DNA from: Octopus sinensis
Lineage: Eukaryota
DNA: 64,000 nucleotides
Assembly: GCF_006345805.1 (NCBI RefSeq)
Contig: NC_042999.1
Span: 161,882,001-161,946,000 of the forward strand
Direction of reading: 5' to 3'
Shown: one piece after another, positions 1-41,885 of the stretch
Layout: each line of letters starts with the position of its first letter
Position numbering within the stretch: position 1 is the stretch's first letter
Translations under genes and position numbers: made by a program
Notes under the pieces: generated by a model
Seen by the model: the letters and a program-made list of their open reading frames with translations, nothing else
Told to the model about the DNA's origin: nothing
The model's database searches: none

Positions 1-656
1 TAAAGTTGAAAGTTTACTTTCACATTCGCTTTTTGTTTCATTTATGGGACAGAACCCTTTTTTAGTGTATTTTATGTAGAAATTATAATAAATTTGACCA
101 AACACTGCAATATTAAAGAAAAGTCAATGCATGTTATATATATGAATGTTTATTACAAACAAATAAACACAATTTTGTGCGTGTGAACTTGTCTCTTGAC
201 AGAGCTACAGTACTGAGATCAAGCAAAGGCAAGATTGGGTGGCTAGCATCTAGAATATTATTAGATGCTCACAGATCTCAATGTCAGCAATGTGGTCCGT
301 GGTATGTAAAGCCTTGCATTTTGTAAAGGGTTAGTGGTGGGCAAGAACAATGATAATCTCAAAGTGAGTTTAGGTATTGACAAAACCAACTGAACATTCT
401 ATTCAAGAAGATTTTCAACTTGGGTACTAAAAACAAATTCCAGAAATCCTTAGCCTGTCAGAACTACACAGGAAAGAGTGGGGATCATTGCAAATCTGAG
501 AAGCTCTAACAGCATGGAAGTGCTGCCAGCCAAGCCTGTCTGAGATACGTGCAAAATAATGAAACCAGTCTGTATACATTCATTCAATGTCCAATCACAA
601 TTGACGAAGTAAAGTTATGTAGAACGGCTGTTGTTGCATATAGAACAAATCCAGAT

Positions 657-1540
657 CTTTCTCTCTCCCCTCTCTTTCTCCCTCTCTCTCTCTTTCCCTC
701 TCCTCTCTTCCTTCTCTTTCTACCCTCTCTCTCTCTCTCTCTTTCCTCTCCTCTTTTCCTTCTCTTTCTACCCTCTCTCTCTCTCTCTTTCCTCTCCTCT
801 CTTCCTTCTCTTTCTACCCCTCTCTCTCTCTCTCTTTCCTCTCCTCTCTTCCTTCTCTTTCTACCCTCTCTCTCTCTTTCCTCTCCTCTCTTCCTTCTCT
901 TTCTACCCTCTCTCTCTCCCTTCTCTTTCTACCCTCTCTCTCTCTTTCCTCTCCTCTCTTCCTTCTCTTTCTCCCTCTCTCCCTTCTCTTTCTACCCTCT
1001 CTCTCTCTCTCTCTTTCCTCTCCTCTCTTCCTTCTCTTTCTACCCTCTCTCTCTCTCTTTCCTCTCCTCTCTTCCTTCTCTTTCTACCCTCTCTCTCTCT
1101 TTCCTCTCTCTCTCTTCCTTCTCTTTCTCCCTCTCTCTCTCTCTCTCCTCTCTCTCTCCTTCTCTTTCTCCCTCTCTCTCTCTCTTTCCTCTCCTCTCTT
1201 CTCTCTTTCTACCCTCTCTTTCTCCCTCTCTCCCTTCTCTTTCTACCCTCTCTCTCTCCTTCTCTTTCTACTCTCTCTCTCTCTCTTCCTTCTCTTCTCT
1301 TTCTACCCTCTCTCTCTCTCTTTCCTCTCCTCTCTTTCCTCTCCTCTCTCTCTCTCTTCCTTCTCTTTCTACCCTCTCTCTCTCTCTTTCCTCTCGTCTC
1401 TTCCTTCTCTTTCTACCCTCTCTCTCTCTCTTTCCTCTCGTCTCTTCCTTCTCTTTCTACCCTCTCTCTCTCTCTTTCCTCTCCTCTCCCCCTTCTCTTT
1501 CTACCCTCCCCTCTCTCTCTCTTTCTTTCTCTCTCTTTCC
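657..1540. repeat. Polypyrimidine (CT)n-derived minisatellite, unit about 44-46 bp
   Basis: Almost pure C/T, with a recurring unit TTTCTACCCTCTCTCTC...TTTCCTCTCCTCTCTTCCTTCTC. It accounts for ORFs 549..1580 and 631..1554. Confidence 0.95.
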
Positions 1541-6039: not shown

Positions 6040-6665
6040 TGATGTCATAGGAGAGAAATGAGTCCGCATGGATGATGGCTCACTTGCATTTAATGAGGCT
6101 GCAAAGAGAGAGACTTGGAGATGCCACTATGAAAGGTTGCTAAATGAAGAGAATGAATGGGAGAAAGAGAGTCTGCTGAATGTCGACCCAACAGAGGGAC
6201 CAGCTATCCGAATTGAGAGTACCTTCATAGATAAAGCAATCAAGAGTATGAAGATAGGGAAAGCCCTGGCCCATCAGGAATCCCCGCAGAGATGCTTAAA
6301 ATATCTGGCAGTGTAGGCTATATTCTAGTTACCTGTATAATCAATAAGGTGATACACGAAGGAGTCATACCCAATGACTGGTGTAGCAGCACATAGTCAA
6401 CTGCTACAAAGGTAAATGTGATGCATTTGATTTGAATCAAAGGTGTCAAATTGTTGGATCAGGTGATGAAAGTCACAGAGAGAGTCAAAGCCCAACTAAT
6501 TAGGGAGAGGGTAAGTCTAAATGAGATGCAGTTTGGGTTTGTGCCAGGGAGAAGCACCACTGATGCTATATTTCTGGTAAGACAGCTGCAGGAGAAATAC
6601 CCAGTCAAAGATAAACCTCTGTATTTGGCTTTCATTGACATGGAGAAAGTCTTTGACAGAGTCTT
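6040..6665 (+). mobile_element. RTE LINE internal fragment (RT N-terminal part), disrupted
   Basis: ETWRCHYERLLNEENEW, QFGFVPGRSTTDAIFLVRQLQEKY and AFIDMEKVFDRV, with frameshifts. Confidence 0.9.
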
Positions 6666-6978
6666 ATATTTTTATATTTATGAATTTTTATGTGTTTATA
6701 AATTTTTATATATCTGTGAACTTTTATATATCTATAAATTTTCGTGTATATGTATTTATAAATTCTTAGAAATTTTTTATATCTCATATAGATGAATGCA
6801 TCTATGTATGTACTATGTATATCATGGAGAATTTCATTAATATGGACTGAATGAATATATACATCGACCTTTGAATTTGTTTTCTCTCCTCCTTAATTTT
6901 ATATATTAATTTTATGAGAGCACTATTCAGTTGAGCTGTATGAAGTGGATATCTATATCACTTATTTCTTCATTGTGT

Positions 6979-7039
<61 letters not shown>

Positions 7040-7041
<2 letters not shown>

Positions 7042-8757
7042 CATCATCATCGTTTAACGTCCGTTTTCCGTGCTAGCACGGGTTGGACGGTTCGACCGGG
7101 GTCTGGGAAGCCAGGGGCTGCACCAGGCTCCAGTCTGATCTGGCAGAGTTTCTACAGCTGGATGCCCTTCCTAACGCCAACCACTCCGCGAGTGTAGTGG
7201 GTGCTTTTTACGTGCCACCTGCACAGGTGCCAGGGGGGTCCGGCATCGGCCACGATTGGTTGGAGCTTTTAACGTGCCACCGGCACGGAAGCCAGCTGAG
7301 GCGGCGCTGGCAATGGCCACGTTCGGATGGTGCTTTTTATGTGCCACCGGCACAGAAGCCAGTCGGGGCGGCGCTGGCATCGGCCACGTTCGGATGGTGC
7401 TTTTTATGTGCCACCAGCACAGAAGCCAGTCGGGGTGGCGCTGGCATCGGCCACGTTCGGATGGTGCTTTTTATGTGCCACCGGCACAGAAGCCAGTCGG
7501 GGTGGCGCTGGTATTGGCCATGTTCGGATGATGCTTTTTATGTGCCACTGGCACAGGTATCACAACTACTATTTCCATCGATATTTATATTTATTTCGAT
7601 GTTCATGTTCATGTACTTGACTCAACAGGTCTCCTCAAGCACAGCGAGACGTTCCAGGATCCAGGGTCCTTTGAATGGGCAGGGGGCTATGCAGAACTGG
7701 TGCAGGAAGCAGCCCGGGTCTTTGCAGTCACAGCATATCTCCAGAGTTCTCGGTCCTTCGCCATAGCCTCAGTGAGGCCCAACGCTCTGAGGTCATGCTT
7801 GACTACCTCATCCCATGTCTTCCTGGTCTACCTCTCCCCCTGATACCTTCAACTGTTTGGGAGTGGCACTTCTTCACACATCTCTCCTCATCCATCCGCA
7901 GTACATGACCATACCATCGCAAGCGTCGCTCTTGCACACCACATCTGATGCTTCTTATGTCCAGCATTTCTCTCAGGGTGCTTACACTCTGTCGTGCGCT
8001 CACACTGACATTACACATCCAGCAGATCATGTTAGCTTCATTTCTTTCAAGTCTACGCATGTCCTCTGCAGTCACAGCCCATGTTTTACTACCATGAAGC
8101 ATGGCAGTTCACACACATGCATCATACAATCTACCTTTCACTCTGAGCAAGAGACCTTTGTCGCCAGTAGGGGTAGGAGCTTTCTGAACTTTGCCCAGGC
8201 TATTCGTATTCTAGTAGTGATACTCTCTGAGCATCCACCTCCACTACTAACTTGGTCACCCATGTAGCGGAAACTATCAACTACTTCTAGTTTCTCCCCC
8301 TGGAGTGTGATGGGATCTGTTTTCTGAGTGTCTGTGATGTCGATTGTCCCTGTGCATCTGCTGCACATGAAAGCTATCTTATCAGTTAATTCCCCTTTGA
8401 TGTTGCTGCACCTCTTATGCGTCCATAGCTTACATTGGGTGCATCTTATGGAGTTTCTACCTACACCTTTCCTACAGATCAAGCAGGGCCACCTACCTGA
8501 GGGTGTGTGTGCTGAGTTCGCCTTTCTGCTTACTATAACTTTGGTCTTTGCTACATTTACTCTAAGGCCCTTTGATTCTAACCCTTGCTTCCACACCTGA
8601 AATTTCTTTTCTAGTTCCGGTAGTGATTCTGCTATGAGAGCCAGGTCATCAGCATAGAGGAGCTCCCAGGGGCATCCTGTTTTGAATTCCTCTGTTATTG
8701 CCTGGAGGACTATGATGAATAAAAGGGGACTGAGGGCTGAGCCTTGGTGTACACCTA
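7040..8757 (-). mobile_element. 5'-truncated RTE LINE: RT C-terminus, 3' UTR with six tandem units, (GAT)n tail
   Basis: GVHQGSALSPL, WKQGLESKGLRVNVAKTK, RLRWYGHV; the stop is near 7687. It is flanked by (TA)n at both ends. Confidence 0.95.
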
Positions 8758-8774
8758 ATATATATATATATATA

Positions 8775-11662: not shown

Positions 11663-12030
11663 TGGTGCTTTTTACGTGCCACTGGCATGAGAGCCAATCA
11701 GGGGGCACCAGCCCCAGCTATGATATAGGTTTTACTTGACTTGACAGGTCTTCTCAAGGATATCATATCACTCGATGCATTAGGGTTATTCTTAGCAGGG
11801 CTGGACATGTGTGGCTGCAATTTCACAGCATATCTCCAAAGGTCCTGGTCTCCTGTCATTGCCTCTGTGAGACCCAATGTTCGAAGGTCATGCTTCACCA
11901 CCTCATCCCATGTCTTCCTGGGTCAACCTCTCCCCCAGGTTCCTTCTACAGATAGAGAGTAGCACTTCCTCACACAGTTGTCTTTATTCATACATAACAC
12001 ATGGCCATACCATTGCTAGTTTCTTCACAC
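11663..12030 (-). mobile_element. RTE fragment (ORF end plus first UTR unit only)
   Basis: VKHDLRTLGLTEAMTGDQDLWRYAV, near-identical to the 14300-14600 segment. It stops right after the first GCACC. Confidence 0.88.
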
Positions 12031-12289: not shown

Positions 12290-12469
12290 GAGTCCCACTC
12301 CAAACGAATGAATTAGTCAAATATGTCGACGAATCTGAAATATCAAAATGTCATGCAACATGGATTCTCTCCTATCATGGGGTTGGACACTTGGTGAATG
12401 TTACTGGTGCAATTTGAGGCCTATATAAACTATGTGATACCAGTACTTACACATACACACACATTCAAA

Positions 12470-12472
12470 TAC

Positions 12473-12546
<74 letters not shown>

Positions 12547-12851
12547 CATATATATCAGAGATACCATATTACATAGCATTACTATATATATATATGTACA
12601 TATATATATATATGTATATATATATGTACATATGTATATGCATATACATATATGTACATATGTATATGCATATACATATATGTACATATGTATATGCATA
12701 TACATATATGTACATATGTATATGCATATACATATATGTACATATATATATATGTATATATATATATGTAATATATATATGTATATATATATATACATAT
12801 ATATATATATGTATATATATATATGTATATATATAAATGTATATATATCTG

Positions 12852-12887
<36 letters not shown>

Positions 12888-12978
12888 CAAATATATCTGT
12901 ATATATATATGTATATATGTATATATATATATATAATATATATATAATATATATATATATATAATATATATATATATA

Positions 12979-13015
<37 letters not shown>

Positions 13016-13379
13016 TAGAAAGAGATCATCAACGATCAAACTACAAGGGAAATTCTCTAGAGGAAGAATTCAGCGAACACCAGAACCAAAGTTGGCGGGC
13101 AGGACATATGAAAATTTAAATAAAAAACAGACTTAAATGCATACCTCGGTTTCGGTCTTTAACAAAAGAATTACTTACATAATTCAAATGTCCGTGACTT
13201 TTCCCTTGTAGTTTGATCGTTGATGATCTCTTTCTAGCATTCGGCCGGCTACCTAGCAGGCCAGCCCTGCCTATATAAACATATATTAGAATTTTCTCTG
13301 ACTTCTCAGATTTTTTGAATGCTGGACTACTGGTTTTAAATTGATATTAATATTAATTTATCTCCCTCATTACTTAAAT

Positions 13380-13458
<79 letters not shown>

Positions 13459-13461
13459 ATG

Positions 13462-13510
<49 letters not shown>

Positions 13511-13537
13511 GTATATATATGTGTGTGTATGTATGTG

Positions 13538-13572
<35 letters not shown>

Positions 13573-13611
13573 ATGTATGTGTGTATATATATATATATAT
13601 ATGTATGTACG

Positions 13612-13649
<38 letters not shown>

Positions 13650-13691
13650 ATGTATATATATATGTATGTATGTATATATATATATAATATA

Positions 13692-13743
<52 letters not shown>

Positions 13744-13994: not shown

Positions 13995-16245
13995 ATCATC
14001 ATCATCAATTAACGTCCATTTTCCATGCTGGCATGGGTTGGATAGTTTGACTGAGGTCTGGAGAGCCAGCCGCTGGGAAATTTTCTACAGGTTGATGCCC
14101 TTCCTAGTGCCAACCAGTCTGAGAGTGTAGTGGGTGCTTTTTACGTGGCCCCAGCACAGGAGCCAGTCTGGCGGGCCTGGCAACGATCATGTTGATATAG
14201 TGCTTTTTATGTGCCACCAGCACAGGAGCCAGTCAAGGGATACTGGCATCGGCCACATTTGGTTTGTGCTTTTTACATGCCACTGGCATGAGAGCCAATC
14301 AGGGGCCACCAGCCCCAGCTATGATATGGGTTTTACTTGACTTGACAAGTCTTCTCAAGGATATCATATCACCCAATGCATTAGGGTTATTCTTAGCAGG
14401 GCTGGACATGCGTGGCTGCAATTTCACAGCATATCTCCAAAGGTCCTGGTCTCCTGTCATTGCCTCTGTGAGGCCCAATGTTTGAAGCTCATGCTTCACC
14501 ACCTCATCCCAATTCTTCCTGGGTCTACCTCTCCCACAGGTTCCTTCTACAGATAGAGAGTAGCACTTCCTCACACAGTTGTCTTCATTCATACATAACA
14601 CATGGCCATACCAATGCAGTCGCCTCTCTTGCACACCGCATTTTATGCTTCTTATGCCCAACTTTTCTCTCAGGGCACTTACACTCTGTCGTGTATGCAC
14701 ACTGACATTACACTTCCAGCAGATCACACTAGCTTCATTTCTTTCAAGCCTACGCATGTCCTCAACATTCATAGCCCATGTTTCACTGCCGTGTTGCATA
14801 GCACCTCGCACACATGCATCATACAGTCTACCTTTCACCCTGAGCAAGAGGCCTTTAGTTGCCAACAGAAGTAGGAGCTCTCTGAACTTTGCCCAGGCTA
14901 TTCCTTACCCTAGTTGCTATTCTCTCAGAGCAACCACTCCCACTACAGTCTTGGTCGCCTAGGTAGCAGAAGCTATTAACTACTTCTAATTTCTCCTCCT
15001 GGCATGTGATGGAATCTTCAGTGTTTATTGCCCCAGTGCATCTTCCACACACAAAAGCTATTTTCCCGGTTAACCTTCCTTAATATTGCTGCACCTTTTA
15101 TGTGCCCGGGTACATCGTATGGAGTTTCTAGCCATGCCTTTTCTACAGATTGAGTAGAAGGAAGTTGTGATTTGACAGCCTTCTTACTAAGACTGGTTTT
15201 GGCTAGGTTAACCCTAAGGCCCTTTGATTCTAGACCTTACTTCCACACCCTAAACTTTGTCTCCAATTCTGGCAGTGACTTGGGTATTAGAGCAAGGTCA
15301 TCAGTATTGAGGGGCTCCCAAGGGCAGCCTGTCTTGTATTCCTCCGTTATTGCCTGGAGGACTATAATAAATAAGAGGGGGTTGAAGACTGATCCTTAGT
15401 GAATCCCTACTTCTTGGAATTCTTCACTATACTTGTTGCCAAACCTCACTTAACTGACAGCATCCCTAGCTCTTACCAGCCACTCGTCTATCCCCAGTTT
15501 CTGCATTGACTACCAAATAAGGGATCAAGGGACCCTGTCAAAGGCTTTCTCCAAGTCAGCTAAAGCCAAGTACAAAGGTTTGTCTTTGACTAGGTATTTC
15601 TCCTGCAGTTGCCTTACCAGAGATATAGCATCAGTGGTGCTTCTGCCTGGCACAAAACCAAACTGCATCTCATCAAGGCTAACTCTCTCCCTAATTAGTT
15701 GAGCTATGACCCTCTTTGTAACTCTCATCGCCTGATCCAATAATTTGATACCCCTGTAGTTATTTCTATCTAAAGCATCACCTTTACCTTTGTAGCAGCT
15801 GACTATGGTGCTGATGCACCAGTCATTGGGTATGACTCTTTCATGAACTACCTGATATACAATGCAGGTGACAAGATTATAACCCACACCGCCTAATATT
15901 TTAAGCATCTCTGCAGTGATTCTTGATGGGCCAGGTGCTTTCCATGTCTTCATATTCTTAACAGCTTTATCTACCTGTGTACTGTCGATTCAGATAGCTG
16001 GTCTCTTAATTGGGCCAATCTTTGGCAGACTCTCCTCTTCCCATTCATTCTCCAAATTCAGCAGTCTTTCATAATGGCTTCTCCAAGCCTTTTTCTTTGC
16101 AGAATCATTAAATGCAAGGGCACCATCATCCATGCTGACACATTTCTCTCCTATGACATCACGGTTTTCTCTCATACACTGTCCTGCAATCCAAAATACT
16201 TCAGTTCTCTAGTCCTCACATTGCTGAACATTGGCAAACTTCGTC
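13995..16245 (-). mobile_element. 5'-truncated RTE LINE (about 2.2 kb, many stops and frameshifts)
   Basis: KAPGPSRITAEMLK, NYRGIKLLDQ, LADLEKAFDRVP, HWYGHV, a 3' UTR with structured units, and an ATC tail. Confidence 0.93.
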
Positions 16246-17147: not shown

Positions 17148-17452
17148 GCACCATCATAATGTGGCCGATGCCAGCGCCGCCTTGGCTGGCTTCTGTGCCG
17201 GTGGCACATAAAAAGCACCATCCGAACATGGCTGATGCCAGACCCCCCTGGCACCTGTGCAGGTGGCACGTAAAAAGCACCCACTACACTCGCGGAGTGG
17301 TTGGCGTTAGGAAGGGCATACAGCTATAGAAACACTACCAGATCAGACTGGAGCCTGGTGCAGCCCCTGGCTTCCCAGACCCCGGTCGAACCGTCCAACC
17401 CGTGCTAGTGTGGAAAACGGACGTTAAACGACGATGATGATGATGATGATGA
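17148..17452 (+). mobile_element. RTE 3'-UTR-only copy
   Basis: Two GTGCCGGTGGCAC..AAAAAGCACC units, the GGAAGGGCAT motif and an ACGTTAAACG(GAT)n tail. Confidence 0.9.
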
Positions 17453-23960: not shown

Positions 23961-24612
23961 AGAGGATACTTAAGTTACAGGCAGTAACCAGCTACCCACA
24001 TAAATCCTACAAGGGATACAAATGAACAGGAGTGAAATCATGAATAATAATAGTAATTATTATTGAGTGAGAGAGCAATGCATGCCATGAAAGTGACGCT
24101 GGGGTACAAACATATGAAGCTCAAGATACCCATCATGACTACCTGTCTGATAAGGGTACACAAGGCACATGCACCACAACCATACGTATGCAACATGGTG
24201 ATCACATATCAAAATAAAGAGCACATGACCTTGCAGGTGGGGCCCAGATAGCATTTTCTTTATGTCAAGTAGCCCATTCCGTTCAAAAGATCTCTGAATA
24301 AGGTTTGTTTAAGGATGATGAACAAAATACTATGTTTCCAGAGGTGAATTATTCAAACCCCAAAGAATTCCTCTCATCACATGGCTATGATGCTCCGCAA
24401 CTACTCCTGCACATGATCAGAGATGCACATATTGTCAGCCACTAAGGGACATGCTCAACTGGTTAAGGTCAAGCAACTGACAAGCAAATCTGTGGTATTG
24501 AGCAGAATATATACAAAGACAAAGTACATGATAACACTTCCAATCAGTTAAGACCAGAAACCATGAGAGCCACTGCCTGGTGGCATCATGGCATAAACTA
24601 ATTATTATTATT

Positions 24613-25132
24613 TGGCATCCGTGCTAGCAGGGTGCAAAGAGCACCATACGAGTGTTATCGTTGACAGAGCGGCTAACCGACTTCCGTGCCAGTGGCACAT
24701 AAAAGGCACCATTCGAGTGTGATCGTTGCCAGCATCGCCTTAATGGCACTTGTGCCCCGTGCTAGTATGGTGCTAAGAGCACCATCTGAGCATGACAGTT
24801 CCCAGAGCAGCTAACCGGCTTCTGTGCCAGTGGCACGTAAAAGGCACCATTCAAGCGTGATCGTTACCAGCTTCGCCCTACTGGCACCTGTGCCGGTGGC
24901 ATGTGTAAAAAGATTCAAGCGAGGTCATTGCCAGTACCGCCTGACTGGTCCCCATGCCGGTGACACGTAAAAGCACCCACTACACTCTCAGAGTGGTTGG
25001 CATTAGGAAGGGCATCCAGCTGTAGAAACTCTGCCAGATCAAGATTGGAGCCTGGTGCAGCCATCTGGTTCGCCAGCCCTCAGTGATATGGTCCAACCCA
25101 TGCTAGCATGGAAAGCGGACGTTAAACGATGA
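24613..25132 (+). mobile_element. RTE 3'-UTR-only copy, divergent subfamily with about 6 structured units
   Basis: GTGCC-N3-GGCAC..AAAA(G)GCACC units alternating with CCGTGCTAG..GGTGC..GCACC units. Same 3' end as the other copies, inserted in (ATT)n. Confidence 0.88.
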
Positions 25133-27288: not shown

Positions 27289-27725
27289 CATCATCATCAT
27301 CATCATTTAGTGTCCGCTTTCCATGCTAGCATGGGTTGGACGGTTCAACTGGGGTCTGTGAAGCCAGGAGGCTGCACCAGGCTCCAGTCTGATCTGGCAG
27401 AGTTTCTACGGCTGGATGCCCTTCCTAACGCCAACCACTCCGCGAGTGTAGTGGGTGCTTTTTACGTGTCATCCGCACAGGTGCCAGATGGAGCTGGCAA
27501 ACGGCCACGGACGGATGGTGCTTTTTACGTGCCACCGGCACAGGGGCCAGACGAGACTGGCAATGGGCACAAACAGATGGTGCTTTTACGTGCCACCGGC
27601 ACGGGGGCCAAGCGAGGCTGGCAACGGCCACGAACGGATGGTGCTTTTACATGCCACCGGCACGGGGGCTAGGCGAGGCTGGCAATGGACACAAACGGAT
27701 GGTGCTTTTACGTGCCACCGGCACG
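27289..27725 (-). mobile_element. RTE 3'-UTR-only copy (5 units)
   Basis: (ATC)n tail. The 5' end begins exactly at CGTGCCGGTGGCAC on the minus strand. Confidence 0.92.
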
Positions 27726-30402: not shown

Positions 30403-31906
30403 CATCATCATCATCATCATCATTTAACGTCCGCTTTCCATGCTAGCATGGGTTGGACGGTTCAACTGGGGTCTGGGGAGCCCGAAAGCTGCACCAGTCC
30501 AGTCAGATCTGGCAGTGTTTCTACAGCTGGATGCCCTTCCTAACGCCAACCACTCCGAGAGTGTAGTGGGTGATTTTATGTGCCACCGACACAGGTGCCA
30601 GACGAGGCTGGCAGACGGCCACGCTCGGATGGTGTTTTTATGTGCCACCGACACAGGTGCCAGATGAGGCTGGCAAACGGCCACGATCGGATGGTGCTTG
30701 TTACGTGCCCACAGCACGGAGGCCAGTCGATGCGGTACTGGCTACGGCCACGTTCGGATGGTTTTCTTATGTGCCACGTGCCACCGGCACTGGTACCACA
30801 AAGATACAAATTCCATTGATGTTCATCTATTTTGATTTGTTTTGATTTTCACTTGCCTCAACAGGTCTTCACAAGTGTCACAAAAGGAAGGTATGCACAG
30901 GTGGACTGACTACGTCCCAGGTAGGGGCCATGGGTTATGGCCTGACTAGTCTTGCCGGGTCTTCGGATGGTGTTTTTATGTGCCACCGACACAGGTGCTA
31001 GATGAGCCTGGCGAACGGCCACGATCGGATGGTGTTTGTCATGTGCCCACCGCACTGACTACGGCACTGATGGATTTCTTGTGTGCCACAGGCACTGGTA
31101 CCACAAGATACAAATTCCATTGATGTTCATCTATTTTGTCTATTTTGATTTTGATTTGATTTTCACTTGCCTCAACCGTGTCTTCACAGTGTCACAGAAA
31201 GGAAGGTATGCACAGGTGACTGACTAGTCTTGCCGGGTCTTCGGAAGGGTTTTTATATGGCAACCGACACAGGTGCCAGATGAGGCTGGTGAACGCCATG
31301 ATCGGATGGTGTTTGTTACGTGCCCACAGCACGGAGGCCGGTCGATGCGGAACTGGCTACGGCCATGTTCGGATGGTTCTCTTGTGTGCCACCGGCACTG
31401 GTACCACAAAGTGTGTGCCACCGGCACTGGTACCACAAGATACAGATTCCATTGATGTTCATCTATTTTGATTTGTTTTGATTTGATTTTCACTTGCCTC
31501 AACAGGTCTTCACAAGTGTCACAAGAAGGAAGTTATGCACAGGTGGACTGACTACGTCCCAGGTAGGGGCCATGGGTTATGGCCTGACTAGTCTTGCCGG
31601 GTCTTCGATGGTGTTTTTATGTGCCACCGACACAGGTGCTAGATGAGGCTGGCGAACGGCCACGATCGGATGGTTTTTGTCATGTGCCCACAGCACGGAG
31701 GCCATTCGATGCGGTACTGGCTACGGCCACTTTCGGATGGTTTTCCTCTTGTGTGCCACCGGCACTGGTACCACAAAGATACAAATTCCCATTGATGTTC
31801 ATCTATTTTGATTTGTTTTGATTTGATTTTGATTTTGATTTTCATTTGCCTCAACAGGCCTTCACAAGTATCACAAGGAAGGTATGCACAGGTGGACTGA
31901 CTACGT
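30403..31906 (-). mobile_element. Head-to-tail multimer (4 units of 270-365 bp) of the RTE 3' UTR with one terminal tail
   Basis: The junction GACTAGTCTTGCCGGGTCTTCG(G)A recurs near 30945, 31222 and 31586. There is a single (ATC)n tail at 30403. Confidence 0.9.
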
Positions 31907-32420: not shown

Positions 32421-34540
32421 CAGATAAGAAAAAGAAATGGAGCAACAATTAACAATTAGAAGTTGATCATTGATATTAAATGGTCACAGTTTAATTGTAG
32501 TTCAAGAACATTTACAACTGTTTCAGTTTGTTATTTCAAAGTAAATTTGCACTTATCTCATTCTATTTAACAAACATCGTCAGAATGATTTAGAGTTTAT
32601 TAGAGGAATATAGATAGGAGAAAAAGGAAAATGAAAAAAAAAAAGGAAAAAGTTCATTAAATCTTTAGGTTTACATTTTTGTGCCCTTTTATGTTCCTTG
32701 TATATGTACGTTCCTTCAATTAGATGAATGGAGTAATAAGTGGGGAAGTGACTAGTTGACAGGCGGTGTTAGTCGAAGGAGTTATACCTGGTAGTAATAT
32801 CTGGTGTTAATTGTAATAAACAGTGCTGCTTGTGACTGCTAGGTAAGTCCCTATGATTACAAATAGTGCCCTTGTTAAAAACTATGGATGCTTTTAAAAA
32901 GTTAGTGTGATATAATGTATAAATTTTTATGTTACATAAAAGGTATAATAAAAATATAAATAAATAACATGTTATGTGTGCTGCAGGTTATCTCCTCATT
33001 AATATAATTAAAACCAATACAGTTGGCTAGGATAGGCTAAATTGCTCGTTTTAATCGTGTTTATGTTATCAGCCGCCCTAGCAATTGGTATGTTAGTCAG
33101 CGATCTAACTTTAAAGTGAATATGATATAGAGAATTATATGGCCAGGTGTACAATGTAGATTTATGATAGATAATTCAGTTAATCGGGGTAATTTAATTT
33201 AATTTAATTGAGATGTGATGTTAAATCATGCTCTGTAGTAAGTGGGAGGGTTAGGGGAGGTAATCAGATGTTAGGCAGAGCAGCTAGTAAACTGTCATGT
33301 AGGTATTAGCGGTATTTAGAGAATAAGAATTTATCTTTATGTAAACATGTTGTATTTTTCTCGTTTTGTTTATTATGTAATTCTGATTTGGCCATTAAAA
33401 TGTAGAGTTTCTCATTTATGCATAAATTACAGTGCTTATTTTTAAGGTTATATGAAGATGTTTTGACTAGGATACACTGTTCTAATCTATAACTAAAATG
33501 ATTATTTTTAAGTTCCCAGATGTAACTACTTAATCTGGTAGAGTTAGTCTTACTTCTATTTATGAAACTTGAGTGATGGGAATTATATCTAAGTTTCATT
33601 TAATTTTTAGTTGCTCCTATATAAGTTTTCTTGTAATTATTTGAGAATACATCACATTGGTAGATTACATTTTTAGTTTTACATTTATTCAAGAATTCAC
33701 AAGTATTTTTTATCTCTGCAACCACATAGATTAGTAAGATTATCTGTGCCAATGATAAGGTGATTATCCGAATTTTTAGAACGTGAGTTATTTGGGGGAT
33801 CACTTTTATTGTGTTTTTTATCTTTATTCTTCCTAGTTTCATAGAAGATGTCTAGCTTTTTATTGTTGATCATCATCATCATCATCATCATCATCGTTTA
33901 ACATCTGCTTTCCATACTAGCATGGGTTGGACGGTTCGACTGGGGTCTGGGAAGCCAGGAGGCTGCACCAGGCCCAGTCTGATCTGGCAGTGTTTCTACA
34001 GCTGGATGCCCTTCCTAACGCCAACCACTCAGTGAGTGTAGTGGGTGCTTTTTACGTGCCAGGGGAGGCTGGCAATGGCCACGATCGGATTGGTGCTTTT
34101 TATGTGCCACTGTCACGGAGGCCAGTCGGGGCGGCACTGGCAATGGCCACGTTCAGATGGTTCTTTAACGTGCCACTTGCACTGGTATCGCAACTACAAT
34201 TTCCATTGATTTTTGAGCGATTTCGATTTCGATTTCACTTGCCTCAACAGGTCGCAAGCAGAGTTTTGTGTCCCAAGAAGGAAAGGTAAGACTTAACAAA
34301 CTTTTTTCTTTTTTTCCTTTTTCTTTTCATTTTCCTTTTTCTACTTTCTATATTCCTCCGATAAACTCTAAATCATTCTGATGATGTTTGTTAAATTGAA
34401 TGAGATAAATGCAAATTTACTTAGAAATAATAAACTGAAACAGCTGTAAATGTTCTTGAAGTACAAATAAACTGTGACCTTTTAATACCAACGATCAACT
34501 TCTAATTGTTAATTGCTGCTCCATTTCTTTTTCGTATCTG
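32421..34540 (-). mobile_element. 5'-truncated Penelope-like element: GIY-YIG endonuclease remnant with an inverted terminal repeat
   Basis: KNVIYQCDV...TYIGAT, NSTRLSSYIWELK and CNLCINEKLYI (33306-33760). 32421-32666 is the reverse complement of 34289-34540. Confidence 0.85.
33869..34285 (-). mobile_element. RTE 3'-UTR-only copy nested in the Penelope-like element
   Basis: (ATC)n tail, GGATGCCCTTCC motif and structured units. Confidence 0.9.
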
Positions 34541-36905: not shown

Positions 36906-37010
36906 ACATGTCATTCTTGAGTTTTGGTATGAATGTACATATTCAAGATATCTCTGCAGATGATTTAAATTTACCACTTCAGAACATTTCAGAAAAATTA
37001 GATAGGCCCA

Positions 37011-37277
37011 TGGCACATAAAAAGCACCATCCGAATGTGGCCGATGCCAGTGGCACGTTAAAAGCACCAACCGATCGTGGCTGATGCCAGACACCCCTGG
37101 CACCTGTGCAGGTGGCACGTAAAAAGCACCCACTACACTCACAGAGTGGTTGGCGTTAGAAAGGGCATCCAGCTGTAGAAACACTGCCAGATCAGACTGG
37201 AGCCTGGTGCAGCCTTCTGGCTTCCCAGACCCCGGTCCTACCGTCCAACTCGTGCTAGCGCGGAAAACGGACGTTAA

Positions 37278-38909: not shown

Positions 38910-38966
<57 letters not shown>

Positions 38967-38990
38967 AGAGAGAGAGAGAGAAGAGAGAGA

Positions 38991-39030
<40 letters not shown>

Positions 39031-39045
39031 AGAGAGAGAGGGAGA

Positions 39046-39077
<32 letters not shown>

Positions 39078-39368
39078 AGAGAGAGAAGAGAGAGAGAAAG
39101 AGAGAGAGAGGGAGAGAGGAGAAAGAGTGAGAGAGAGTGAAGAGAGAGAGAGGAGAGAGAGAGGAGGGAGAGAGAGAGGAGAAAGAGTGAGAGAGAGAGA
39201 AGAGAGAGAGAGAAGAGAGGAGAGAGAGAGGAGGGAGAAGAGAGAGAGAAGAGAGAGAGAGAGAAGAGAGAGAAGGAGAGAGAAAGAGAGAGGAGAAAGA
39301 GTGAGAGAGGAGAAAGAGTGAGAGAGAGAGAGAGGAGAGAGAAGAGAAGAGAGAGAAGAGAGAGAGAG

Positions 39369-39402
<34 letters not shown>

Positions 39403-39612
39403 AAAGAGAGAGAGAGAGATGAGAGAGAGAGAAAAGAGAGAGAGAGAGAAAAGAGAGAGAGAGAGAAAAGAGAGAGAGAGAGAAAAGAGAGAGAGAGAGA
39501 AGAGAGAGAGAGGAGAGAGAGAGAGGAGAGAGAGAGAGGAGAGAGAAAGAGGAGAAAGAGTGAGAGAGAGAGGAGAGATAGAGGGGAGAGGGGGAGAGAG
39601 AGAGAGAGAGAA
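38905..39612. repeat. Polypurine (GA)n-derived tract, about 700 bp
   Basis: Direct inspection. It explains ORFs 38767..39321 and 38826..39638. Confidence 0.95.
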
Positions 39613-40377: not shown

Positions 40378-41885
40378 CATCATCATCATCATCAATTAAC
40401 ATCCGTTTTCCATGCTGGCATGGGCTGAACAGTTTGACTGATGTCTGGAGGGCCAGTGGCTACACCAGGCTTCAGTCTGGTCTCGCAGAGTTTCTACAGC
40501 TGGATGCCATTCCTAAAGCAAACCACTCTGAGAGTGCAGTGGGTGCTTTTTACATGCCACCGGCACAGGTGCCAGTCAAGCAGGCCTGGCAATGATCATG
40601 TTCAGTTGGTGCTTTTTAAGTGTCACCAGCAACGGAGCTAGTAAAGCAGGCCTGGCAACGAACATGTTGAGATGGTACTTTTTAAGTGCCACCAGCACAG
40701 GAGCCAGTCAGGGGGGTACTGGCATCGGCCATGTTCAGTTGGTGTTTTTTACATGCCACCAGCACAGTAGCCAGTCAGGCAGAACTGGCTTCAACCACAT
40801 TCGGATGGTGCCTTTGACATGCCATCGGCATAGGAGCCAGCCAGAGGGCACCAGCCCCAGCTACAATATGGGTTTTATTTGACTCAACAGGTCTTCTCAA
40901 GCATATCATATTGCCCAACACATCACGAGTATTTTTAACAGGGCAGGACATGATTAGCTGCCATCTCACTTTAGTTGCCGGGTCTTCTCAATCACAGTGT
41001 ATCTCCAAAGGTCCCGGTCTCCAGTCATTGCGTCTGTGAGGCCCAGTGTTCGAAGGTCATGCTTCACCACCTTACCTCATGTCTTCCTGGGTCTACCTCT
41101 TCTACAGCTTCCTTCTACAGTTAGGGAGTGGCATTTCCTCACACAGCTGTCTTCATTCATACATAACACATGACCATACCAGCGCAGTCGTCTCTCTTGC
41201 ACACCACATTGGATGCTTCTTATTTCCAACTTTTCTCTCAGGGTGCTTACACTCTGTCGTGTATGCACACTGACATTACACATCCAGCAGATCATACTAG
41301 CTTCATTTCTTTCATGCCTATGCATGTCGTCAGCAGGCACAAACCCATGTTTCACTGCAGTTCGCACACATGCATCATACAATCTACCTTTCACTCTGAG
41401 CAAGAGGCCCTTTGTTGTCAGTAGGAGTAGAAGCCTACTGATTTTTGCCTAGGCTATTCTTATTCTAGTTGTAACACTCTCTGAGCAGCCACTCCCACTA
41501 CAGACTGGTCACCTAGGTAGCAGAAGCTATCAACTACTTCTAGTTTCTCACCCTGGCATGTGATGGAATCTGTTTTCTAAGAATCTGTGGTGTTTATTGC
41601 CCCTGTGCATCTGCCGCACATGAAAGTTATCTTCCTGGTTAATCTTCCTTTGATATTGCTGCACCTTTTATATGTCCATATCTTACACTGGGTACATCTT
41701 ATGGAGTTTTTTCCTACACCTTTTCTACAGATCGAGCAGGACCATCTACCTGAAGGGGTGTGTGATGTGTTCGCCTTCTGACCTACTAGGACTTTGGTTT
41801 TTGCAACATTGACTCTAAGGCCCTTCGATCCTAAGCCTTGCTTCCACACCTGAAATTTCTTCTCTCGTTCTGGTAGTGATTCTGC
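40378..41885 (-). mobile_element. 5'-truncated RTE LINE
   Basis: WKQGLGSKGLRVNVAKTK, GRWSCSICRKGVG, RLRWYGHV, a UTR with 5 units, and an ATC tail. Confidence 0.93.

What the first reader, a model, noticed from the sequence alone, without database searches (positions are those of the whole stretch)
7198..7556. Tandem array of compact H-type pseudoknot units in the RTE 3' UTR
Six units start near 7200, 7262, 7329, 7396, 7463 and 7530, mostly at a 67-nt period. In element sense each contains YGTGC C GGTG GCACR TAAAAAG CACC. This folds as S1 = CGTGC/GCACG (5 bp), L1 = C, S2 = GGTG/CACC (4 bp), no L2, and a 7-nt A-rich L3. That geometry matches small luteoviral-type frameshift pseudoknots (established). 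The motif recurs in about 10 independent copies in the window (11664, 14130-14260, 17190-17285, 24695-24985, 27460-27725, 30575-31770, 34050-34180, 37011-37130, 40545-40830), across subfamilies whose linkers differ. Inference: the UTR is a polymer of folded RNA modules that could serve as RT/ORF2-binding sites, exonuclease roadblocks (xrRNA-like) or RT pause sites. I know of no description of it, but I cannot search. Caveat: the apparent C1-G15 to T1-A15 covariation could be CpG decay.
Basis: partly seen in the sequence, partly recalled or inferred. Interest (0 to 1): 0.8.

Follow-up and report, generated by a model that had tools for sequence, protein, structure and literature searches.

The report
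Hairpin-unit minisatellite in octopus LINE tail
The six repeats are real and form a variable-length tandem array in the 3' untranslated region of a very abundant octopus retrotransposon; each unit carries a conserved 26-base core with a good stem-loop, but the proposed pseudoknot has no comparative support and remains only a possibility.

Summary
Window 7200-7556 is a 67-nt tandem array (5.4 copies) on the minus strand. It lies between the decayed end of a reverse-transcriptase ORF and a 159-nt tail that ends in (GAT)n. The same array-plus-tail occurs at about 10 loci in the window and in every Octopus vulgaris locus I fetched: 90 units in 28 arrays, 1-11 units each, mostly in 5'-truncated LINE copies.

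The 26-nt core is conserved as a block. Variability at non-CpG sites is 0.07 in the core against 0.28 in the linkers.

Stem S1 (5-6 bp) is kept in every unit type. It shows some compensatory changes and a bias toward wobble pairs.

Stem S2 (GGUG/CACC), which would make the pseudoknot, shows no covariation and no wobble bias. It is lost or weakened in unit types that active subfamilies carried. A 4-bp match of this kind arises by chance in about 15% of shuffles.

There is no Rfam match. The array lies downstream of the stop codon, so frameshifting is excluded.

Best reading: a LINE 3' UTR minisatellite of hairpin modules. The pseudoknot is possible (about 0.2) but unproven.

In passing, I found that the tail's terminal two-stem hairpin is conserved from octopus to a cnidarian. 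That hairpin is the more likely RT-recognition element.

The parts
7200..7556 (-). Tandem array of six 62-67-nt units (the finding)
   Evidence: TRF gives period 67, 5.4 copies and 88% matches. The sequence was read in element sense.
7200..7225 (-). Core of unit 1, next to the tail: TGTGCAGGTGGCACGTAAAAAGCACC. L1 is A and S2 is intact.
7262..7287 (-). Core of unit 2: CGTGCCGGTGGCACGTTAAAAGCTCC. S2 has a U-U mismatch.
7329..7354 (-). Core of unit 3, an exact consensus match
7396..7421 (-). Core of unit 4, with L1 = U
7463..7488 (-). Core of unit 5, an exact consensus match
7530..7555 (-). Core of unit 6, the first unit of the array: TGTGCCAGTGGCACATAAAAAGCATC. S2 has one mismatch and one wobble pair.
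7425..7445 (-). Second hairpin of each unit (H0): GCCAG-loop-CTGGC. It also occurs at 7358-7378, 7291-7311 and 7229-7244. The stems are nearly invariant and the loop is 6-11 nt and variable.
7041..7199 (-). 159-nt tail shared by all copies (CACTACACTCGCGG...GTTAAACGATGATGATGA)
   Evidence: nhmmer finds 39 tails in the window plus the fetched loci.
7052..7090 (-). Terminal two-stem hairpin module: CCGTCCAAC-CCGTG-CTAG-CACGG-AAAAC-GGACG-TTAAAC. It is the likely RT-recognition element.
   Evidence: It is conserved in Hydractinia and in metagenomic relatives, with C-G/U-G/U-A and G-C/G-U/A-U series at two pairs.
7040..7051 (-). (GAT)4 terminal trinucleotide repeat at the 3' end of the element
7557..7802 (-). 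Spacer between the ORF end and the array, including the decayed microsatellite and ATCGATGGAAATAGTAGTTGTGATACC
   Evidence: The same layout appears in the intact relative L001.
7803..8760 (-). Decayed, 5'-truncated reverse-transcriptase C-terminal region. ORF fragments are at 7803-8102 and 8138-8596, and the latter carries a PHD finger.
   Evidence: Pfam PHD hit at 1.1e-05. Homologues P0001-P0003 and 3772 further relatives were found.
14133..14290 (-). Array of another copy, with the RT ORF upstream at 14299-15953
17186..17281 (+). Two-unit array of another copy
24612..24977 (+). Array of a subfamily C copy. It includes the nested-hairpin unit type and a unit without CACC at 24881-24926.
27454..27725 (-). 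Array of another copy (61-nt units, dimeric higher-order repeat)
30568..31766 (-). Subfamily B copy, with its ORF-end + spacer + units block repeated at a period of about 641 bp
34044..34117 (-). Two-unit array of another copy
37003..37130 (+). Short array of another copy
40542..40848 (-). Five-unit array of another copy
11664..11689 (-). Single unit of a copy that lacks the remaining units and the tail

Best explanation
This is a variable-number minisatellite in the 3' UTR of a very abundant, mostly 5'-truncated RTE-like LINE of Octopus.

Shown: each 61-67-nt unit holds two GC-rich inverted repeats. The first is GCCAG/CTGGC around a loop of variable length and sequence. The second is S1, YGUGC(C)/(G)GCACR, followed by UAAAAAG and CACC. 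The array lies between the ORF stop plus a spacer and a 159-nt tail. The tail ends in a deeply conserved two-stem hairpin and (GAT)n. Unit number differs between insertions (1-11). Some arrays are higher-order dimers of near-identical units, so the arrays grow and shrink by slippage or unequal exchange.

Inferred: the 26-nt core is under purifying selection in the active lineages. What is maintained is the S1 stem-loop together with sequence-specific single-stranded or protein-contacted segments (the GGUG loop, the A-tract and CACC). It serves as an accessory cis-element of the element's RNA, for example as extra docking sites for the element's own protein or for 3'-end protection.

The real initiation signal for target-primed reverse transcription is the terminal hairpin plus (GAT)n. 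S1 has the same stem sequence as the inner terminal hairpin (CGUGC/GCACG), and one subfamily carries an almost exact copy of that hairpin inside its array. The units therefore probably descend from duplications of the terminal region. The pseudoknot contact GGUG/CACC is not required by any of the data.
For: Anatomy. In the intact relative L001 the stop codon is at 787-789, the array starts at about 960 and the tail at 1251.

Abundance and copy-number variation: 39 tails, and 90 units in 28 arrays of 1-11 units. Higher-order repeats have periods of 122, 133 and 138, and there is an 11-unit dimeric array in L003.

Constraint on the core: non-CpG variability is 0.067 in the core and 0.047 in the H0 stems, against 0.282 elsewhere in the unit.

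S1: it is present in all unit types and 91.7% of cells are paired. Double changes occur at three pairs (25 cells against 3.3 in shuffles, 0/500). The wobble-to-mismatch count is 50:17 by unit and 33:16 by array (p = 0.02). RNAalifold returns only S1.

Terminal module: it is conserved in Hydractinia and in five metagenomic contigs. There 98.6% of cells are paired, with a C-G/U-G/U-A series and a G-C/G-U/A-U series. In two of those relatives (Hydractinia and L012) the ORF demonstrably runs into the module and there is no array; the other contigs also lack an array.

Copy of the terminal hairpin inside an array: CCGTGCTAGCA at window 24619.

Literature: stringent LINEs need their 3' tail, and terminal repeats pair with the target (PMC6007223). 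Octopus RTE-2_OV has a repeat-filled 3' UTR of about 600 nt (PMC9115989).
Against: No function was tested.

The S1 signal rests largely on the CpG-prone pair 1-15. Without that pair the wobble bias is not significant (17:11 per array).

The folding z-score of the array is modest and the same on both strands (-2.08 and -2.02). The palindromes are therefore not shown to be RNA-specific.

The similarity between the core and the terminal hairpin is not significant by shuffling (66/500).

The strong conservation of GGUG, the A-tract and CACC, together with variable positions 6 and 22, is also what a pseudoknot would produce.

The units come from about 150 kb of sequence, not from a genome-wide set. 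Most are dead copies, so lineage-level changes are few.
Confidence: 0.55

Rival explanations
1. Each core folds as a compact H-type pseudoknot: S1 of 5 bp, L1 of 1 nt, S2 GGUG/CACC of 4 bp, no L2, and a 7-nt A-rich L3 lying in the S1 minor groove. The UTR is then a polymer of such modules, acting as protein-binding or stabilising elements.
For: The complementarity exists, and S2 is complete in 56 of 90 units.

The S2 positions are the most conserved in the unit (non-CpG variability 0.036). The A-tract is conserved and L3 length is fixed at 6-7 nt. The loop is always 5 nt, with no indels.

The most variable core positions outside the CpG-affected pair 1-15 are 6 and 22, both unpaired in this model. 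Position 6 is A, C, G or U in unit 1 of different subfamilies, which argues against a required C6-G10 pair.

In one subfamily the same two strands form a nested hairpin, GGUGC-loop-GCACC. Its homologue in another insertion reads GGAGC-loop-GCUCC, a compensatory U-A to A-U change.

The energetics are permissive. The 5-bp S1 gives -5.4 to -6.4 kcal/mol and S2 alone gives -4.6 kcal/mol.
Against: S2 has no covariation: 88.1% paired against 87.5% in shuffles (68/500), and one double-change cell (235/500). There are 35 unpaired cells against 8 wobble cells.

The wobble-to-mismatch count is 11:15. The CpG 6-7 decay products TG (S2 kept) and CA (S2 broken) occur 13:9 per array, which is not significant.

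Three unit types shared by independent insertions weaken or lose S2 while keeping S1. They are the subfamily C unit without CACC (4 insertions), the subfamily B unit with loop UGUGG/UGAGG/UGUUG (3 insertions) and the subfamily B first unit ending AACC.

A 4-bp complement to the loop occurs by chance in 15% of shuffles with Watson-Crick pairs only, and in 41-63% with G-U allowed.

The plain 6-bp/triloop hairpin (-8.0 to -9.0 kcal/mol) competes for G10. From my own knowledge of pseudoknot penalty terms, it is roughly isoenergetic with the pseudoknot. A 1-nt L1 across a 4-bp S2 may also be sterically tight; this too is from my own knowledge and was not computed.
Confidence: 0.2
2. The array is functionless satellite DNA that hitch-hikes in the UTR. 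The apparent conservation of the core reflects recent common ancestry, homogenisation of units, the CpG-rich and therefore fast-decaying linkers, and ascertainment of units through the core.
For: Arrays vary freely in length, and some expanded locally as near-identical dimers. Units were detected with a profile dominated by the core. Relatives in other phyla have no array at all and end directly in the terminal module. Individual unit types can lose parts of the core. The folding z-score is the same on both strands.
Against: The fourfold difference in variability holds at non-CpG sites only (0.067 against 0.282). It also holds between subfamilies whose linkers, H0 loops and unit lengths (61-67 nt) have diverged. 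Homogenisation would act on whole units, not on the core alone. Every copy examined keeps at least one unit next to the tail, and that unit has an intact core at the subfamily level. The S1 wobble bias is specific to the sense strand.
Confidence: 0.2
3. The units act as exonuclease-resistant (xrRNA-like) roadblocks, as ribosomal frameshift stimulators or as self-cleaving ribozymes.
Against: The array begins about 170-250 nt downstream of the stop codon, and no ORF continues through it in element sense. No Rfam family matches the array, either at gathering thresholds or at E<=5. That search covers frameshift elements, xrRNAs and ribozymes. A 26-nt H-type fold has no element that could encircle a 5' end as known xrRNAs do (my own knowledge).
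Confidence: 0.03

Closest known systems
Tandem or simple repeats in the 3' UTRs of RTE-clade LINEs, including octopus RTE-2_OV (PMC9115989; Tay et al. 2010, cited there)
   Same: The position matches: between the stop codon and the 3' terminus of a single-ORF, heavily 5'-truncated LINE that ends in a trinucleotide repeat. The 3' UTR is about 600 nt and mostly repeat. A short microsatellite follows the ORF end.
   Different: Here the main repeat is a 61-67-nt minisatellite with two conserved hairpins per unit, not a microsatellite. The RTE clade itself was not tested by phylogeny.
3'-tail stem-loops of 'stringent' LINEs recognised by their own RT (eel UnaL2 / zebrafish ZfL2; Kajikawa and Okada 2002, Hayashi et al. 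2014, cited in PMC6007223)
   Same: A conserved stem-loop lies immediately upstream of short terminal repeats, as in the terminal module at 7052-7090. Its stems are maintained through compensatory and wobble changes across distant hosts.
   Different: That description fits the terminal module, not the array. The array units only share the S1 stem sequence with it. No binding or retrotransposition data exist for this family.
Luteovirid-type -1 frameshift pseudoknots (BWYV, ScYLV, PEMV-1)
   Same: On paper the stem and loop lengths are similar: S1 of 5 bp, short L1, short S2 and an A-rich final loop of about 7 nt.
   Different: There is no slippery site and no overlapping ORF, and the units lie in a UTR. 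L1 is 1 nt rather than 2. There is no covariation for S2 and no Rfam match. This is a resemblance in geometry only, not membership.
R2 retrotransposon 3' UTR RNA bound by R2 protein (for example PMC11601368)
   Same: It is a structured 3' UTR of a non-LTR element that recruits the element's protein for target-primed reverse transcription. Pseudoknots have been described in R2 RNAs.
   Different: It belongs to a different clade with a different endonuclease type, has a single-copy structured UTR rather than a repeated module, and shows no sequence similarity.

Membership tests
H-type pseudoknot (structural class) | Two helices in the order S1(5')-S2(5')-S1(3')-S2(3'), with loops long enough to span the grooves | tested here: inconclusive
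   The complementarity exists in sequence, and S2 is complete in 56 of 90 units. Whether 1 nt can span a 4-bp S2 was not computed. The competing 6-bp hairpin has a similar energy.
H-type pseudoknot (structural class) | Comparative (covariation) support for both helices | tested here: not met
   S1 has partial support. S2 has none: 1 double-change cell (235/500 shuffles) and 88.1% paired against 87.5% in shuffles.
H-type pseudoknot (structural class) | Tertiary fold shown by probing, melting or a solved structure | not testable with these tools
   This needs SHAPE/DMS, UV melting, NMR or crystallography.
Luteovirid-type frameshift stimulator | Located 5-9 nt downstream of a slippery heptamer, at the overlap of two ORFs | tested here: not met
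   The array lies 170-250 nt after the stop codon in a UTR, and no ORF runs through it in element sense.
Exoribonuclease-resistant RNA (xrRNA) | Match to known xrRNA folds or families | tested here: not met
   There is no Rfam hit in 7198-7556, either at gathering thresholds or at E<=5.
Exoribonuclease-resistant RNA (xrRNA) | Stalls Xrn1 in vitro | not testable with these tools
   This requires a biochemical assay.
LINE 3' UTR tandem repeat (minisatellite) | Head-to-tail units between the ORF stop and the 3' tail, with copy number varying between insertions | tested here: met
   There are 1-11 units in 28 arrays, and higher-order repeats are present.
[quoted passage not shown] | The RT groups with RTE in a phylogeny, within a single APE-RT ORF | not tested
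   Only RT C-terminal fragments are present (RVT_1 and PHD hits). No endonuclease part lies in the window and no reference set was available. The octopus literature calls a similar element RTE-2_OV.
[quoted passage not shown] | 3' end in short tandem (often trinucleotide) repeats, no poly(A), and heavy 5' truncation | tested here: met
   The elements end in (GAT)n. Most copies are 0.3-0.6 kb 3' fragments.
Stringent-type LINE 3' recognition stem-loop | A conserved stem-loop just upstream of the terminal repeats, with stems kept through compensatory change | tested here: met
   This is met for the terminal module at 7052-7090, not for the array. Of 70 cells, 98.6% are paired, and two pairs show double changes across octopus, Hydractinia and metagenomic relatives. 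With only 7 sequences the shuffle control is weak (55/500).
Stringent-type LINE 3' recognition stem-loop | Required for RT binding or retrotransposition | not testable with these tools
   This needs EMSA or a retrotransposition assay.

The most novel reading that the evidence does not exclude
The conserved 26-nt core really folds as a minimal H-type pseudoknot with an A-minor triplex, and an active octopus LINE (possibly the brain-expressed RTE-2_OV family) carries 2-11 such modules in its 3' UTR. The modules would act as repeated docking or stabilising elements. They would have evolved by interleaving two formerly adjacent hairpins, a copy of the terminal hairpin and a GGUGC/GCACC hairpin. 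Subfamily C still shows that adjacent arrangement.
Probability: 0.2. Interest if true: 0.6.

Novelty: new member of a known kind. Interest (0 to 1): 0.35.

Why it matters
This element family is extremely abundant in octopus. The window holds about 10 copies in 64 kb, and every Octopus vulgaris locus I fetched had several. A conserved cis-element in its 3' UTR would therefore be present in hundreds of thousands of copies and in many host transcripts. Octopus RTE-type LINEs have been reported as transcribed in the brain.

Knowing which part of the 3' end is the functional RNA signal matters for three reasons. It bears on how the family amplifies. It helps with annotation, because the arrays are currently translated into 'hypothetical proteins'. 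It is also needed for any attempt to build a retrotransposition assay.

The practical result here is negative for the pseudoknot and positive for two simpler features. One is a constrained stem-loop core in the array. The other is a terminal two-stem hairpin conserved from cnidarians to cephalopods, which is the better candidate for the RT-recognition element.

Tried and rejected
- Known RNA families: Rfam over the whole window at gathering thresholds, and over 6950-7850 at E<=5, gave nothing in the array. The only hits were weak microRNA-like matches to the adjacent TA microsatellite.
- Collection scans for more copies: the tail pattern in JGI metagenome contigs gave 0 hits. The core pattern in viral contigs gave 0 hits. 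The core pattern in prokaryotic genomes gave 3 chance matches, at or below the number expected by chance on my own rough estimate. More octopus copies were instead obtained by searching the protein database with the spurious ORF that reads through the array.
- Homology of the core to the terminal hairpin by local alignment against shuffles: not significant (66/500). It is kept only as a lead, supported by the exact 11-mer CCGTGCTAGCA inside the subfamily C array.
- H0 hairpin covariation: none, because the stems are nearly invariant.
- Target-site duplications, sought to define 5' ends and test whether truncation points cluster at a unit phase (the RT-pausing idea): no credible duplication of >=9 nt was found in 27 copies. 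The test could not be done. My impression by eye that several truncated copies begin at the 5' edge of S1 is not reliable.
- Literature search for the exact sequences of the core, tail and terminal module: no paper holds them.
- L007-L009 (Logan contigs) turned out to be an old, decayed copy. They give no lineage-level information.
- L011, a 64%-identical RT relative, has a different 3' UTR and a (TCA)n end, so it does not help.
- I considered a histone stem-loop, an ENE-type triple helix, a poly(A) signal and a Pol III terminator on the antisense strand. All were rejected on sequence inspection.
Full report
**1. What is in the sequence**

Tandem Repeats Finder reports an array at 7200-7556 with period 67, 5.4 copies and 88% matches. 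The window has 20 matches at <=3 mismatches where none is expected, and 36 at <=7 mismatches where shuffles give none.

Only two of the six local units fit the consensus exactly, and S2 is fully complementary in four of the six.

**2. Context**

The layout in element sense (minus strand) is as follows.

| Feature | Window coordinates |
|---|---|
| Decayed, 5'-truncated RT C-terminal region; ORF fragments 7803-8102 and 8138-8596, the latter with a PHD finger | about 8760-7803 |
| Spacer | 7802-7557 |
| Array | 7556-7200 |
| 159-nt tail | 7199-7041 |
| (GAT)4 at the end of the tail | 7051-7040 |

An intact relative on an ENA contig (L001) shows the same order. Its stop codon is at 787-789. After it come about 100 nt, a short (AATCGA)n-like microsatellite, four to five units, the tail and (GAT)n. 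That gives a 3' UTR of about 610 nt.

[quoted passage not shown] I could not test the RTE clade assignment.

**3. More copies**

No eukaryotic DNA collection was available. I therefore searched the protein database with the spurious 227-aa ORF that reads through the array on the plus strand. This found Octopus vulgaris 'hypothetical proteins', and I fetched 20 kb around four of them plus some short contigs.

The tail occurs 39 times in the window plus these loci. A unit profile finds 90 units in 28 arrays of 1-11 units. Many copies extend upstream into the spacer and the ORF end, while others stop inside the array. They are ordinary 5'-truncated LINE copies, not SINEs.

At least five subfamilies can be told apart by their linkers, H0 loops, unit lengths (61-67 nt) and unit-specific core variants. 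Several arrays are higher-order dimers. One (L003 9949-10614) is five near-identical dimers plus an end unit, so arrays expand locally.

**4. Conservation**

Variability at non-CpG positions across 70 full-length units is shown below.

| Region | Non-CpG variability |
|---|---|
| 26-nt core | 0.067 |
| H0 stems (GCCAG/CTGGC) | 0.047 |
| Rest of the unit | 0.282 |
| S2 (within the core) | 0.036 |
| S1 (within the core) | 0.060 |
| L3 (within the core) | 0.103 |

The variable core positions are 1 and 15 (both in CpGs), 6 (L1) and 22.

The core is thus constrained as a block, loops included. That criterion is weak, however, because a triplex-forming L3 would also be conserved. Most copies are also dead on arrival, so their private mutations say nothing about RNA function.

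**5. Pair analysis**

On 84 units (alignment A2), S1 is 91.7% paired. Three of its pairs have changes on both sides:
- pair 1-15: UA 21, UG 21, CG 19
- pair 2-14: GC 54, GU 11, AU 2
- pair 5-11: CG 57, UG 9, UA 2

There are 25 double-change cells against 3.3 in shuffles (0/500).

A strand-specific test gives some extra support for S1. Transitions that make a G-U wobble in the sense RNA outnumber those that make an A-C mismatch. The count is 50:17 by unit and 33:16 by array (p = 0.02). Without pair 1-15 it falls to 17:11, which is not significant.

S2 is different. It is 88.1% paired against 87.5% in shuffles (68/500). It has one double-change cell (235/500), 35 unpaired cells against 8 wobble cells, and a wobble-to-mismatch count of 11:15.

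The CpG at positions 6-7 offers an internal control. Its two decay products are TG, which changes only L1, and CA, which breaks S2 pair 7-26. They occur 13:9 per array, which is not significant. RNAalifold on whole units returns only the 6-bp S1 hairpin.

**6. Lineage-level variants**

These matter more than private mutations, because they were carried by active elements.
- Subfamily C unit 2 reads TGTGCCGGTGGCATGTGTAAAAAGATTCAAGCG and has no CACC or any G-U-tolerant complement. It occurs in four independent insertions (window 24914, L006 10149, L006 11282, and L005 7123 in a related form).
- Subfamily B unit 3 has the loop UGUGG, UGAGG or UGUUG instead of CGGUG, in three independent insertions. 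That leaves 2 of 4 S2 pairs, or 3 bp in a shifted register.
- The first unit of subfamily B ends AACC, leaving 3 bp.

S1 is kept in all of these. Against this, the tail-proximal unit keeps GGUG and CACC in every subfamily.

**7. Chance and energy**

A 4-bp Watson-Crick complement to the 5-nt loop within the next ~16 nt arises in 15% of shuffles, and in 41-63% if G-U is allowed. The existence of S2 in one ancestral unit is therefore unremarkable.

ViennaRNA gives the following energies.

| Fold | Energy (kcal/mol) |
|---|---|
| 6-bp S1 hairpin with triloop | -8.0 to -9.0 |
| 5-bp S1 hairpin | -5.4 to -6.4 |
| S2-only hairpin | -4.6 |

With usual pseudoknot penalties (my own knowledge, not computed here), the pseudoknot and the plain hairpin are about isoenergetic. 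The whole array folds with z = -2.08 in sense and -2.02 in antisense. That is modest and not strand-specific.

**8. What speaks for the pseudoknot**

Three things keep the pseudoknot alive.
- The conservation pattern of section 4 fits it.
- Position 6 takes all four bases in unit 1 of different subfamilies, so C6-G10 is not required.
- A nested variant exists in subfamily C. There an almost exact copy of the terminal hairpin (CCGTGCTAGCA-GG) is followed by a simple hairpin, GGUGC-AAAGA-GCACC (window 24619-24645 and 24757-24783). The homologous unit in an independent insertion reads GGAGC-GCUGACA-GCUCC, a compensatory U-A to A-U change.

That nested variant is one case, in a different architecture. 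I therefore put the pseudoknot at about 0.2.

**9. Known families**

Nothing in Rfam matches the array. Frameshifting is excluded by position. An xrRNA role has no support. No paper in the library contains the core, tail or terminal sequences.

**10. The terminal module**

This lies outside the finding but bears on mechanism. A profile of the RT C-terminus finds 3772 relatives.

In Hydractinia symbiolongicarpus (L013) and in the metagenomic contig L012, the ORF runs straight into CCGTCCAAC-CCATG-CTAG-CATGG-AAAAC-GGACG-TTAA. It stops at that TAA and is followed by (GAT)n, with no array. Contigs L016-L020 carry the same module and (GAT)n end and also lack an array, but the one I translated (L016) has a decayed frame.

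The octopus tail ends in the same module (7052-7090). Across seven sequences, 98.6% of cells pair in a two-stem hairpin. The last outer pair runs C-G / U-G / U-A, and an inner pair runs G-C / G-U / A-U. With so few sequences the shuffle control is weak (55/500).

This module plus (GAT)n is the likely recognition and priming signal, as in stringent LINEs (PMC6007223). The octopus tail also keeps a relic of the ancestral C-terminal coding sequence (AGATCAGACTGGAG against AGATCAGATTGGAAG). The octopus 3' UTR therefore looks like an insertion or duplication between the working ORF end and an old 3' end.

S1 has the same stem sequence as the inner terminal hairpin. The overall similarity is not significant by shuffling (66/500).

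**11. Verdict**

The array is a LINE 3' UTR minisatellite of hairpin modules with a selectively constrained core. S1 is a plausible RNA stem-loop. The pseudoknot is unproven and is not needed to explain the data.

The finding is ordinary in kind: repeat-filled 3' UTRs of RTE-type LINEs are known, and this one has been mentioned in print. It has a moderately interesting conserved core and a more interesting, deeply conserved terminal hairpin.

Noticed in passing
window 7052-7090 (-); L013:2093-2150; L012:3586-3650; L016, L017, L018, L019, L020: The last ~40 nt before (GAT)n form a two-stem hairpin, CGUCY-AAC-YCRUG-CUAG-CAYGG-AAAAY-RGACG-UUAA. It is conserved from octopus to the cnidarian Hydractinia and several metagenomic eukaryote contigs, with compensatory and wobble series at two pairs. 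In Hydractinia and L012 the RT ORF ends inside it (...RPTHASMENGR*).
   Followed up: partly
window 7100-7150 (-) compared with L013:2050-2075: The octopus tail keeps a relic of the ancestral C-terminal coding sequence (AGATCAGACTGGAG against AGATCAGATTGGAAG, 'RSDWK'), although the working ORF ends about 600 nt upstream. The 3' UTR therefore seems to have arisen by duplication or insertion between the ORF end and an older 3' end.
   Followed up: partly
window 24619-24645 and 24757-24783 (+); L005 about 7240-7275 (-): One subfamily has a unit type with a near-exact copy of the terminal hairpin (CCGTGCTAGCA) followed by a simple hairpin GGUGC-AAAGA-GCACC. The homologue in another insertion reads GGAGC-GCUGACA-GCUCC, a compensatory change.
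   Followed up: partly
window 30568-31770 (-): A block of ORF end + spacer + three units is repeated at a period of about 641 bp. The junction is ...CACCATCCGAA|GACCCGGCAAGACTAG. It is either a template switch during reverse transcription or a later tandem duplication.
   Followed up: no
window 7083-7766 (+); proteins P0004, P0005, P0007, P0012 (Octopus vulgaris), P0008, P0011 (O. bimaculoides): Long spurious ORFs run through the arrays on the antisense strand. They are deposited as 'hypothetical predicted protein' or as parts of gene models in octopus annotations.
   Followed up: partly
window 8138-8596 (-); one search hit list: A PHD-type zinc finger sits inside the RT C-terminal region. This RT family has thousands of relatives in marine metagenomes, Hydractinia and Branchiostoma. 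Its non-LTR clade was not determined.
   Followed up: no
window 6451-6795 (+): An RT fragment of the same or a related LINE lies on the opposite strand, about 250 bp beyond the 3' end of the element studied. A TA microsatellite (6979-7041) lies between them.
   Followed up: no
window 11664-11900 (-): This copy has the ORF end, spacer and one unit but no further units and no tail. It ends ...GCACCAAAAAAGAATTAAC, so it is either 3'-truncated or deleted.
   Followed up: no
window 656-1536, 12469-13740, 38910-39611: Very long dinucleotide microsatellites are present: (TC)n of about 880 bp, (AT)n of about 1.2 kb in two blocks, and (GA)n of about 700 bp.
   Followed up: no
L011:986-1269: A 64%-identical RT relative has an unrelated 3' UTR that ends in (TCA)n. 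It contains a single core-like stretch, TGTGTCGGTGTGTCACGACACATTAAAATAACC.
   Followed up: no
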